Assembly (NCBI RefSeq): GCF_001194135.2
Contig: NC_068994.1
Location: forward strand, 1,253,767 to 1,317,766
Direction: 5' to 3'
From: Octopus bimaculoides
Taxonomy: Eukaryota
DNA: 64,000 nt
Part shown: piece by piece, positions 58,599 through 58,746 of the stretch
Position numbering within the stretch: the first letter of the stretch is position 1
How the letters are laid out: each line of letters starts with the position of its first letter
Notes under the pieces: model-generated
Databases searched by the model: none
What the model was told of the DNA's origin: nothing
The model's input: the letters and a program-made list of their open reading frames with translations, nothing else
Made by a program: the position numbers and the translations under genes

Positions 58599-58746
58599 AC
58601 ACCAGGGGGCAGTGAACTACCAATGGATTTATTTCAACTGATTGTGTCTGAGCTGCCTACTTGGAACAGTAGAATTCAACACCAGGGGGCAGTGATGTTA
58701 CAGTCCAGTGACTGGATATTGGTGAATCTATCACCAGATGGCAGTA
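58599..58746 (+). promoter_or_regulatory. Cluster of three same-orientation CTCF-like motifs
   Basis: ACACCAGGGGGCAG (58599), ACACCAGGGGGCAG (58679) and TCACCAGATGGCAG (58731), each 13/14 to the core consensus CCASYAGRKGGCRS. Confidence 0.55.

What the first reader, a model, noticed from the sequence alone, without database searches (positions are those of the whole stretch)
58599..58746. Triple same-orientation CTCF-like array upstream of a cephalopod protocadherin
Seen: three motifs each 13/14 to CCASYAGRKGGCRS within 150 bp. The first two share an identical 17-mer (ACACCAGGGGGCAGTGA) exactly 80 bp apart, with unrelated spacers. I saw no equally good match elsewhere in the window. Known: vertebrate clustered Pcdh promoter choice depends on oriented CTCF sites and cohesin loop extrusion, CTCF is present across bilaterians, and cephalopod Pcdh arrays expanded independently. 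Inference: this may be a loop anchor or insulator of a convergently evolved CTCF-based Pcdh regulatory system. The motifs point rightwards, away from this gene, so a boundary or a link to genes to the right is as plausible as a promoter site.
Basis: partly seen in the sequence, partly recalled or inferred. Interest (0 to 1): 0.8.

Follow-up and report, generated by a model that had tools for sequence, protein, structure and literature searches.

The report
Three clustered CTCF-like motifs in octopus
Three strong, same-strand matches to the CTCF binding consensus really do sit within 150 bp in intergenic DNA of an Octopus bimaculoides protocadherin cluster, but they were made by tiny local duplications 20 kb from the nearest gene, and nothing I could test links them to a vertebrate-style protocadherin choice system.

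Summary
There are exactly three matches (at most 1 mismatch) to CCASYAGRKGGCRS in the 64-kb window, all on the + strand, at 58599, 58679 and 58731. The first two lie in an identical 17-mer 80 bp apart. Sites 1 and 2 are the two best CTCF-matrix hits in about 264 kb of O. bimaculoides DNA that I could reach.

The window is CM046614.1 at about 1.25-1.32 Mb. It carries one protocadherin gene (P0029) on the minus strand. The array lies 19.9 kb upstream of that gene's start codon and points away from it.

The array is unique sequence with no CpG. It sits between a microsatellite with an assembly gap and remnants of a SINE and a LINE. It is not part of that SINE or LINE, not a tandem repeat, not a protocadherin pseudogene, and has no second copy in 205 kb of other octopus DNA.

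Sites 2 and 3 are homologous over about 35 bp, and their core is no better conserved than their flanks.

Six protocadherin genes have no strong CTCF-like site within 10 kb upstream of the start codon or inside the large exon. Their true promoters are unmapped, however.

Best reading: a candidate CTCF-type binding cluster, possibly a boundary element, created by micro-duplication. The proposed convergent protocadherin choice system is unsupported. Genome-wide copy number, conservation and occupancy could not be tested.

The parts
58599..58615 (+). Site 1: ACACCAGGGGGCAGTGA, a CTCF-type core (13/14 to CCASYAGRKGGCRS); the matrix window is 58596-58614
   Evidence: Scores 22.6 bits, iid p 1.6e-8. 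This is the best hit in about 264 kb of octopus DNA examined.
58672..58703 (+). Unit 2: GAATTCA-ACACCAGGGGGCAGTGA-TGTTACAG. Site 2 is its 17-mer at 58679-58695, identical to site 1.
   Evidence: Scores 21.4 bits, p 4e-8.
58724..58758 (+). Unit 3: GAATCTA-TCACCAGATGGCAG-TAGTGATGTCACAG. Site 3 is its core at 58731-58744. It is a diverged copy of unit 2 with a 3-nt indel.
   Evidence: Scores 17.4 bits, p 5.7e-7. 26 of 32 aligned positions are identical to unit 2. Both core changes inside the consensus fall on its degenerate R and K positions.
58446..58830 (.). Host sequence of the array: unique, non-coding, CpG-free DNA with no detectable periodicity. It also carries a GCTAYTAATTATCT pair at 58487 and 58557.
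   Evidence: No second copy in the window or in 205 kb of other octopus loci. Six-frame protein search gave 0 hits. No Pfam hit, no Rfam hit, no blastx or nhmmer support for a Pcdh origin. Zero CpG. D3 repeat.
57957..58445 (.). Assembly gap (57957-58352) embedded in (TA)n, followed by (TA)n/(TG)n microsatellite up to 58445. This is the left edge of the contig that carries the array.
58830..58950 (+). Old, 3'-truncated copy of the abundant octopus tRNA-like SINE. The array lies about 85-100 bp 5' of its head and is not part of it.
   Evidence: aligned with the copies at about 6217 and 18823.
58961..59460 (-). Degenerate LINE reverse-transcriptase fragment, 3'-truncated at 58961.
   Evidence: Pfam RVT_1, E 1.3e-6. 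O. bimaculoides RT fragments found. 80.7% nt identity to the L001 copy over 58961-59305 only; the homology stops before the array.
36317..38698 (-). Large coding exon of the protocadherin gene (P0029, named 'protocadherin beta-15 isoform X1'). A splice acceptor lies just upstream of the ATG. Small 3' exons are at about 31324-31088 and 30499-30446.

Best explanation
A short sequence matching the CTCF core consensus was copied locally twice, giving one 17-bp copy and one copy of about 35 bp. This happened inside unique, CpG-free intergenic DNA of an O. bimaculoides head-to-tail protocadherin cluster. The result is a homotypic cluster of three same-strand, high-scoring CTCF-type sites spaced 80 and 52 bp apart.

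If octopus CTCF keeps the conserved bilaterian specificity (inferred, not tested here), up to three CTCF molecules could load side by side. The element would then act as a local architectural or insulator element between cluster genes. It could also serve as a right-facing anchor for genes at higher coordinates. It would not be a promoter-choice site for the window's gene, because it is 19.9 kb from that gene's ATG and points away from it.

Shown: the motifs, their strength, their rarity, their origin by duplication, and their genomic setting. Inferred: CTCF binding and any architectural role.
For: - Three hits against 0.32 expected; 0 of 100 shuffles reach three. Exact 17-mer occurring twice.
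- Matrix scores of 22.6, 21.4 and 17.4 bits. Sites 1 and 2 are the top two of all sites in the window plus 205 kb of other octopus DNA, where none reaches 20 bits.
- Empirical single-site rate of 1 per 29 kb, never clustered. Three independent sites within 146 bp are therefore not expected even genome-wide.
- Spacers are unrelated and there is no periodicity. This is the pattern of a binding-site cluster, not a satellite.
- Not part of the neighbouring SINE or LINE, not a Pcdh relic, no other copy found.
- Site 3 differs from site 2 inside the consensus only at the degenerate R and K positions.
- CTCF-like motifs are reported at cephalopod TAD boundaries and loop anchors, O. bimaculoides included.
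- The window lies in a same-strand Pcdh cluster.
Against: - There is no occupancy, accessibility, Hi-C or cross-species data for this locus.
- The matrix is the vertebrate one and was recalled from memory. Octopus CTCF specificity is assumed.
- All three sites carry a mismatch at the strongly preferred first C of the core.
- Between units 2 and 3 the core (11/14) is no better conserved than the flanks (15/18). The 'tolerated substitutions' pattern is biased, because site 3 was noticed only because it still matches.
- The array sits in a 958-nt span with no CpG, the most CpG-depleted GC-rich stretch of the window. It is embedded among repeats and lies 250 bp from an assembly gap. A long-standing unmethylated regulatory island would not look like this.
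- Only about 0.01% of the genome could be searched for further copies.
- Six Pcdh genes show no partner sites.
- Orientation-dependent looping is unproven outside vertebrates.
Confidence: 0.4

Rival explanations
1. Neutral by-product. A chance CTCF-like 17-mer was copied by replication slippage or by templated (polymerase-theta type) repair insertions. The copies are drifting and nothing binds them with any consequence.
For: - Short exact local duplicates of 15-22 nt with spacing of 33-200 bp are common in this DNA: 5 in the window and about 1 per 25 kb elsewhere.
- The 17-mer identity ends abruptly on both sides, as templated insertions do.
- Core and flank divergence of units 2 and 3 are equal.
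- The context is CpG-free and repeat-rich.
- No partner sites at six Pcdh genes.
Against: A sequence that happens to be a top-scoring CTCF match (p about 1e-8) and is then copied twice is very unlikely. My rough estimate from the rates is well under one such triple per genome. All three copies keep the consensus.
Confidence: 0.25
2. Part of an unrecognised, low- or medium-copy transposable element. The short direct repeats with unrelated spacers would be its internal regulatory or transposase-binding repeats (LTR U3-like, or subterminal repeats of a DNA transposon). Any CTCF likeness would then spread with the element, as with SINE B2 in mouse.
For: - The array is flanked by a microsatellite, a SINE remnant and a LINE remnant.
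- Short direct repeats with unrelated spacers are typical of transposon ends and promoters (established knowledge).
- The abundant octopus SINE itself carries a near-CTCF segment that yields 3 of the 7 background hits. TE-borne CTCF-like motifs therefore exist in this genome.
- Only about 264 kb of a genome of about 2.7 Gb was searchable.
Against: - No second copy in the window or in 205 kb of other loci. This argues against a family of tens of thousands of copies.
- No inverted-repeat partner nearby apart from microsatellite.
- No TE protein domains in any frame of the block or of its left flank.
- Homology with the adjacent LINE stops at 58961, and the SINE consensus starts after the array.
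Confidence: 0.2
3. A binding-site cluster for a factor other than CTCF, for example one of the many lineage-expanded cephalopod C2H2 zinc-finger proteins. That factor would recognise the longer shared word CACCAGRKGGCAGT(AGT)GATGTYACAG or the recurring CAGTGA.
For: - Units 2 and 3 share sequence well beyond the 14-nt CTCF core.
- CAGTGA recurs at 58609, 58689 and 58704.
- The first core position is a mismatch to CTCF in all three sites.
- Octopus has a very large C2H2 family (my own knowledge, not checked here).
Against: Site 1 shares only the 17-mer, which is essentially the CTCF core plus 3 nt. The match to the CTCF matrix is far better than chance. No alternative factor can be named or tested.
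Confidence: 0.1
4. The array is a component, HS5-1-like anchor or promoter site, of a convergently evolved, orientation-dependent CTCF/cohesin system that chooses among octopus protocadherin genes.
For: - It lies inside a head-to-tail Pcdh cluster.
- Relative to minus-strand genes at higher coordinates, it would lie downstream and point back at them. That is the geometry of the vertebrate HS5-1 reverse sites (PMC7811963).
- Some octopus Pcdh gene models span 110-124 kb across other Pcdh genes.
Against: - No CTCF-like site above 13.2 bits within 10 kb upstream of six Pcdh start codons, and none of 8 bits or more in their large exons.
- No recurrence of the array in five other Pcdh loci.
- Oriented looping is unproven outside vertebrates.
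- No published link between CTCF and octopus Pcdhs was found.
Confidence: 0.05

Closest known systems
Vertebrate clustered-protocadherin CTCF sites (promoter CSE, exonic CBS, and the reverse-oriented HS5-1 sites)
   Same: Strong CTCF-consensus motifs in one orientation, inside a head-to-tail protocadherin gene cluster. There are several sites at one element, as at HS5-1a/b.
   Different: Six octopus genes show no per-gene promoter or exonic sites. The three sites are packed into 146 bp rather than flanking an enhancer. The array lies 19.9 kb from the nearest ATG and is antisense to it. No shared constant exons were shown. The protocadherin expansion is independent. No binding data exist.
Tandem same-orientation CTCF clusters at vertebrate TAD boundaries
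   Same: A homotypic, co-oriented cluster of strong motifs in intergenic DNA. Cephalopod TAD boundaries and loop anchors are reported to be enriched for CTCF-like motifs (PMC9023564, PMC13652810).
   Different: Known boundary clusters are usually spread over kilobases, are conserved and are hypomethylated. This array is 146 bp long, has no CpG, is of unknown conservation, and was made by micro-duplication.
TE-borne CTCF sites (mouse SINE B2 and similar; PMC3368268, PMC9902604)
   Same: The neighbourhood is repeat-rich. The octopus SINE also carries a near-CTCF segment.
   Different: The array is outside the adjacent SINE and LINE remnants, and no other copy was found in about 264 kb.
Templated-insertion or slippage micro-duplications
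   Same: Copies of 17 and about 35 bp within 150 bp, with sharp ends and unrelated spacers.
   Different: Such events copy arbitrary sequence. Here the copied word is a top-percentile CTCF match, and it was copied twice.

Membership tests
CTCF binding site (motif level) | High-scoring match to the conserved core CCASYAGRKGGCRS or the 19-column matrix | tested here: met
   Three sites at 13/14. Scores of 22.6, 21.4 and 17.4 bits; p = 1.6e-8 to 5.7e-7. The matrix was recalled from memory.
CTCF binding site (motif level) | The species has a CTCF orthologue with the same DNA specificity | not tested
   CTCF and cohesin are reported for the squid E. scolopes (PMC9023564). The octopus protein was not fetched and its specificity is unknown.
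CTCF binding site (motif level) | In vivo occupancy, accessibility, or insulation at the site | not testable with these tools
   No ChIP, CUT&Tag, ATAC or Hi-C tracks were available. The supplements of PMC13652810 are not held.
CTCF binding site (motif level) | Core better conserved than flanks, or conserved across species | tested here: inconclusive
   Within the locus, units 2 and 3 show core 11/14 against flanks 15/18, so the core is not favoured. Cross-species comparison was not possible.
Vertebrate-type clustered-Pcdh CTCF promoter-choice system | A CTCF site (CSE) at a fixed short distance upstream of each variable exon | tested here: not met
   In six genes the best site within 10 kb upstream of the ATG scores 13.2 bits or less, and no shared 10-mer was found in the 1 kb upstream. 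Caveat: splice acceptors precede all six exons, so the transcription start sites are unmapped.
Vertebrate-type clustered-Pcdh CTCF promoter-choice system | A CTCF site inside the variable exon | tested here: not met
   No site of 8 bits or more in any of six large coding exons.
Vertebrate-type clustered-Pcdh CTCF promoter-choice system | Opposed orientation between promoter sites and distal enhancer sites | tested here: inconclusive
   The array is + strand and the cluster genes here are minus strand. That is compatible with a downstream reverse anchor for genes to the right, but no partner sites were found and the right-hand neighbour could not be fetched.
Vertebrate-type clustered-Pcdh CTCF promoter-choice system | Variable exons spliced to shared constant exons | not tested
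   The window gene has its own small 3' exons within 8 kb. Some gene models span 110-124 kb across other Pcdh genes. No transcript data were available.
TE-derived CTCF site | The motif lies inside a repeat family with many dispersed copies | tested here: inconclusive
   No copies in the window or in 205 kb of other loci. Not part of the adjacent SINE or LINE. The whole genome was not searchable.
Tandem repeat or minisatellite | Head-to-tail units with similarity across the whole unit | tested here: not met
   TRF is negative over the array. Autocorrelation is not significant.
DNA-transposon subterminal repeats | A matching inverted set or terminal inverted repeat at the other end of the element | tested here: inconclusive
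   No minus-strand copy of the 17-mer (up to 2 mismatches) anywhere in the window. No inverted match other than microsatellite. Gaps at 57957-58352 and 60116-60507 could hide one.

The most novel reading that the evidence does not exclude
The triple array is a right-facing, HS5-1-like CTCF/cohesin anchor for the minus-strand protocadherin genes lying beyond the right end of the window. Cephalopods would then have independently recruited oriented CTCF sites to regulate an independently expanded protocadherin cluster.
Probability: 0.05. Interest if true: 0.85.

Novelty: new member of a known kind. Interest (0 to 1): 0.3.

Why it matters
How octopus neurons choose among about 168 protocadherin genes is unknown. 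So is whether orientation-dependent CTCF looping exists outside vertebrates. A confirmed CTCF anchor inside an octopus protocadherin cluster would bear on both questions. As it stands, the locus is a precise and cheap test case: one 150-bp element with three sites, easy to probe by EMSA or DAP-seq and to look up in existing Hi-C and ATAC data. The negative result for six genes already argues against a simple copy of the vertebrate design with one CTCF site per gene near the start codon or in the large exon.

Tried and rejected
1. Block as the 3' end of the adjacent LINE: rejected. Nucleotide homology with the L001 copy (80.7%) stops at 58961. A distant relative (L002) has a PHD-finger ORF after its RT, with no tblastx match to the block.
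2. Block as part of the octopus SINE: rejected. The SINE consensus head starts at about 58830, after the array.
3. Decayed protocadherin pseudogene: rejected. blastx against 120 Pcdh proteins found nothing significant. An nhmmer profile of six exons matched only a 24-nt patch, E 4.6.
4. Decayed minisatellite: rejected.
5. Structured RNA: no Rfam hit in the block. Fold z-scores were -0.44 and -2.05.
6. Six-frame protein search of 58455-58862 against 5.8 billion proteins: 0 hits. This is uninformative about copy number, because non-coding octopus DNA is not in that collection.
7. Pfam on frames of the block and its left flank: nothing except the RT.
8. Exact-pattern scans of metagenome and viral contigs: 0 hits, as expected.
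9. Reaching the array or its right-hand neighbour through gene look-ups: failed. The nearest fetched locus (L003) ends at window 48698. Two gene ranges were too long to return DNA.
10. Search for a shared promoter element among six Pcdh upstream regions: none found.
11. Hi-C loop tables of PMC13652810: supplements not held. Two papers (Heger 2012, Albertin 2015) are not held.

Full report
OBSERVATION

The array is real. A both-strand scan of the whole window for CCASYAGRKGGCRS, allowing one mismatch, returns exactly three hits. All are on the + strand, at 58599, 58679 and 58731. Dinucleotide shuffles expect 0.32 hits, and none of 100 shuffles reaches three. The 17-mer ACACCAGGGGGCAGTGA occurs exactly twice, 80 bp apart.

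I also scored the sites with a 19-column CTCF count matrix. I recalled it from memory as JASPAR MA0139.1, so it is approximate. I used the window's AT-rich background. The sites score 22.6, 21.4 and 17.4 bits, which corresponds to exact iid p-values of 1.6e-8, 4e-8 and 5.7e-7 per position and strand. The next best site in the window scores 15.4 bits. It lies at 34232, inside an intron of the protocadherin gene.

WHERE THIS IS

The window is Octopus bimaculoides, GCA_001194135.2, chromosome CM046614.1, at roughly 1,253,767-1,317,766. Locus L003 maps to the window at 100% identity with the same gaps. The window contains 18 assembly gaps.

The only protocadherin in the window is P0029, named 'protocadherin beta-15 isoform X1'. 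It is on the minus strand.
- Its large coding exon runs from 38698 to 36317.
- Small 3' exons lie at about 31324-31088 and 30499-30446.

The array therefore lies 19.9 kb upstream of the start codon and on the opposite strand. A second protocadherin (P0045, L006) lies 170 kb to the left on the same strand. This fits the published head-to-tail organisation (PMC6339937).

IMMEDIATE CONTEXT

- To the left: a 396-nt gap inside (TA)n, then (TA)n/(TG)n microsatellite up to 58445.
- To the right, first: an old, 3'-truncated copy of the abundant tRNA-like octopus SINE, at about 58830-58950 on the + strand. The window holds two further copies, near 6217 and 18823.
- To the right, next: a degenerate LINE reverse-transcriptase fragment on the minus strand, at about 58961-59460. 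It matches Pfam RVT_1 at E 1.3e-6, and its closest relatives are O. bimaculoides RT fragments.

WHAT THE BLOCK IS NOT

- Not the missing 3' end of that LINE. An 80.7%-identical copy in L001 aligns only with 58961-59305. A more distant relative, whose RT is followed by a PHD-finger ORF, gives no tblastx match to the block.
- Not part of the SINE. The SINE consensus head begins 85-100 bp after site 3.
- Not a tandem repeat. TRF reports nothing, and autocorrelation over 58446-58830 shows no significant period.
- Not a protocadherin relic. blastx against 120 protocadherins and an nhmmer profile of six exons find only a 24-nt patch, at E 4.6.
- Not a known RNA family, and not notably structured as RNA.
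- No frame encodes anything recognisable.
- No second copy exists in the window or in 205,425 non-N bases of other O. bimaculoides DNA, loci L001 and L004-L008.

That sample makes a very high-copy family unlikely. It says nothing about low- or medium-copy repeats.

HOW THE ARRAY AROSE

Sites 1 and 2 share only the 17-mer, and the identity ends abruptly on both sides.

Sites 2 and 3 are homologous over about 35 bp:
- unit 2 is GAATTCA ACACCAGGGGGCAG T---GATGTTACAG
- unit 3 is GAATCTA TCACCAGATGGCAG TAGTGATGTCACAG

They match at 26 of 32 aligned positions and differ by one 3-nt indel. The array is therefore the product of two very short local duplications, not of three independent motif births.

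Within the CTCF core, site 3 differs from site 2 at the R and K positions and at the already mismatched first base. All of these changes are tolerated by the consensus. This pattern is biased, however, because site 3 was noticed only because it still matches. The core (11/14) is also no better conserved than the flanks (15/18).

IS IT MORE THAN CHANCE?

Yes, as an array. In the 205 kb of comparison DNA, one-mismatch IUPAC hits occur once per 29 kb and never twice within 1 kb. No site reaches 20 bits.

Real octopus DNA does carry about nine times more sites of at least 15 bits than an iid model predicts: 8 observed against 0.89 expected. By my reading of the flanking sequence, three of the seven IUPAC hits fall in the SINE segment CCCACTGCATGGCACC.

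Short exact local duplicates are common here: 5 in the window and about one per 25 kb elsewhere. But it is improbable under pure neutrality that the copied word would be a top-percentile CTCF match and would be copied twice. That is why I rank a protein-binding cluster above the neutral by-product. The margin is modest, because the locus was picked after the fact from a large scan.

TEST OF THE PROTOCADHERIN-SYSTEM IDEA

In vertebrates, nearly every variable exon has a CTCF-binding CSE at a fixed distance upstream of its ATG. Alternate alpha exons have a second site within the exon. These forward sites pair with reverse sites at HS5-1 (PMC7811963).

I fetched five further O. bimaculoides protocadherin loci. 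In all six genes:
- the best CTCF-matrix hit within 10 kb upstream of the ATG scores 13.2 bits or less;
- no hit of 8 bits or more lies inside the large exon;
- the 1-kb upstream regions share no 10-mer.

There is an important caveat. In all six genes a polypyrimidine tract plus AG lies a few tens of nucleotides before the ATG. The large exon is therefore not the first exon. The true promoters lie further upstream at unknown positions, so the promoter part of this test is weaker than it looks.

Geometrically, the array faces right. For minus-strand genes beyond the right end of the window it would be a downstream, back-facing site, like HS5-1. I could not fetch that neighbour, and I found no partner sites.

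The literature supports only the general premise. CTCF-like motifs are enriched at squid TAD boundaries and are detected at loop anchors in three coleoids, O. bimaculoides included (PMC9023564, PMC13652810). Orientation dependence is not established outside vertebrates and is absent in echinoderms (PMC13317027). My full-text searches found no paper that links CTCF to cephalopod protocadherin regulation.

A FURTHER OBSERVATION

The array sits in a CpG-free span from 57742 to 59096, which is 958 non-N bases. Only 3 of 268 GC-rich (at least 40% GC) 600-bp windows in the whole window have zero CpG. The window's median CpG observed/expected ratio is 0.24. All three sites read GGCAG where the canonical consensus often has GGCG. 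This does not look like a long-protected unmethylated island. On the other hand, CpG-free sites would be insensitive to methylation.

VERDICT

The element is best described as a candidate homotypic cluster of CTCF-type binding sites, created by micro-duplication in intergenic DNA of a protocadherin cluster. I put this at about 0.4.

Rivals, with my confidence in each:
- neutral by-product, 0.25;
- unrecognised transposable element, 0.2;
- another zinc-finger factor, 0.1;

Noticed in passing
window 38698-38760; L004-L008 about 9940-10000: In all six protocadherin genes a polypyrimidine tract plus AG (a splice acceptor) lies a few tens of nt before the ATG. The large 'single' coding exon is therefore not the first exon, and the promoters lie further upstream. 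The ORF's first ATG at 38749 is inside the acceptor tract; the annotated start is 38698.
   Followed up: partly
window 6150-6360, 18760-18960, 58830-58950; L005 1358 and 50423; L007 1525: The abundant octopus tRNA-like SINE carries a segment, CCCACTGCATGGCACC, two mismatches from the CTCF consensus. Mutated copies reach 13/14 and account for 3 of 7 background hits in 205 kb. This could inflate genome-wide 'CTCF motif' counts in octopus.
   Followed up: partly
window 57742-59096: A CpG-free span of 958 non-N bases around the array, at about 42% GC. The window median CpG observed/expected ratio is only 0.24.
   Followed up: partly
window 54430-55253: A strongly G/T-skewed minisatellite block: (AGTGTAGTAGGGGAC) x6.4, (GACAGTGTAGT) x19 with a 66-nt super-unit, and (GTG)n running into a gap. 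It creates a spurious 265-aa minus-strand ORF.
   Followed up: partly
window 58616-58639 against L004 11542-11560 and L008 11528-11551: The spacer after site 1 (AACTACCAATGGATTTATTTCAAC) matches the same position, about 1.53 kb into the coding sequence (the 'NGFIST' region), in two protocadherin paralogues (19/19 and 21/24). The nhmmer profile gives only E 4.6. It is either chance or a tiny templated patch from a Pcdh exon.
   Followed up: partly
gene look-ups for P0044 and P0087 (no DNA returned): Two annotated O. bimaculoides protocadherin gene models span 110 kb and 124 kb. The 124-kb model contains another complete protocadherin gene. This hints at long-range splicing across neighbours, or at annotation artefacts.
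   Followed up: no
window 34232-34250 (+): A fourth, weaker CTCF-like site, CTGCAGCCAGGGGGCAGGG (15.4 bits), in the same orientation as the array. It lies in the intron between the large exon and the 3' exons of the protocadherin gene.
   Followed up: partly
window 24597-24795 (-): A weak nhmmer match (E 0.006, high compositional bias) to positions 1973-2136 of the protocadherin-exon profile, about 6 kb beyond the last exon of the gene. It may be a relic of an exon or a composition artefact.
   Followed up: no
window 58487-58500 and 58557-58570: A direct repeat, GCTAYTAATTATCT (13/14), 70 bp apart and just left of the array. Each copy contains a TAATTA homeodomain-type core.
   Followed up: no
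protein P0003: A 194-aa RT fragment 61% identical to the octopus LINE is deposited at NCBI as 'RNA-directed DNA polymerase, partial [Escherichia coli]', on a 586-bp contig. This is probably contamination or mislabelling.
   Followed up: no
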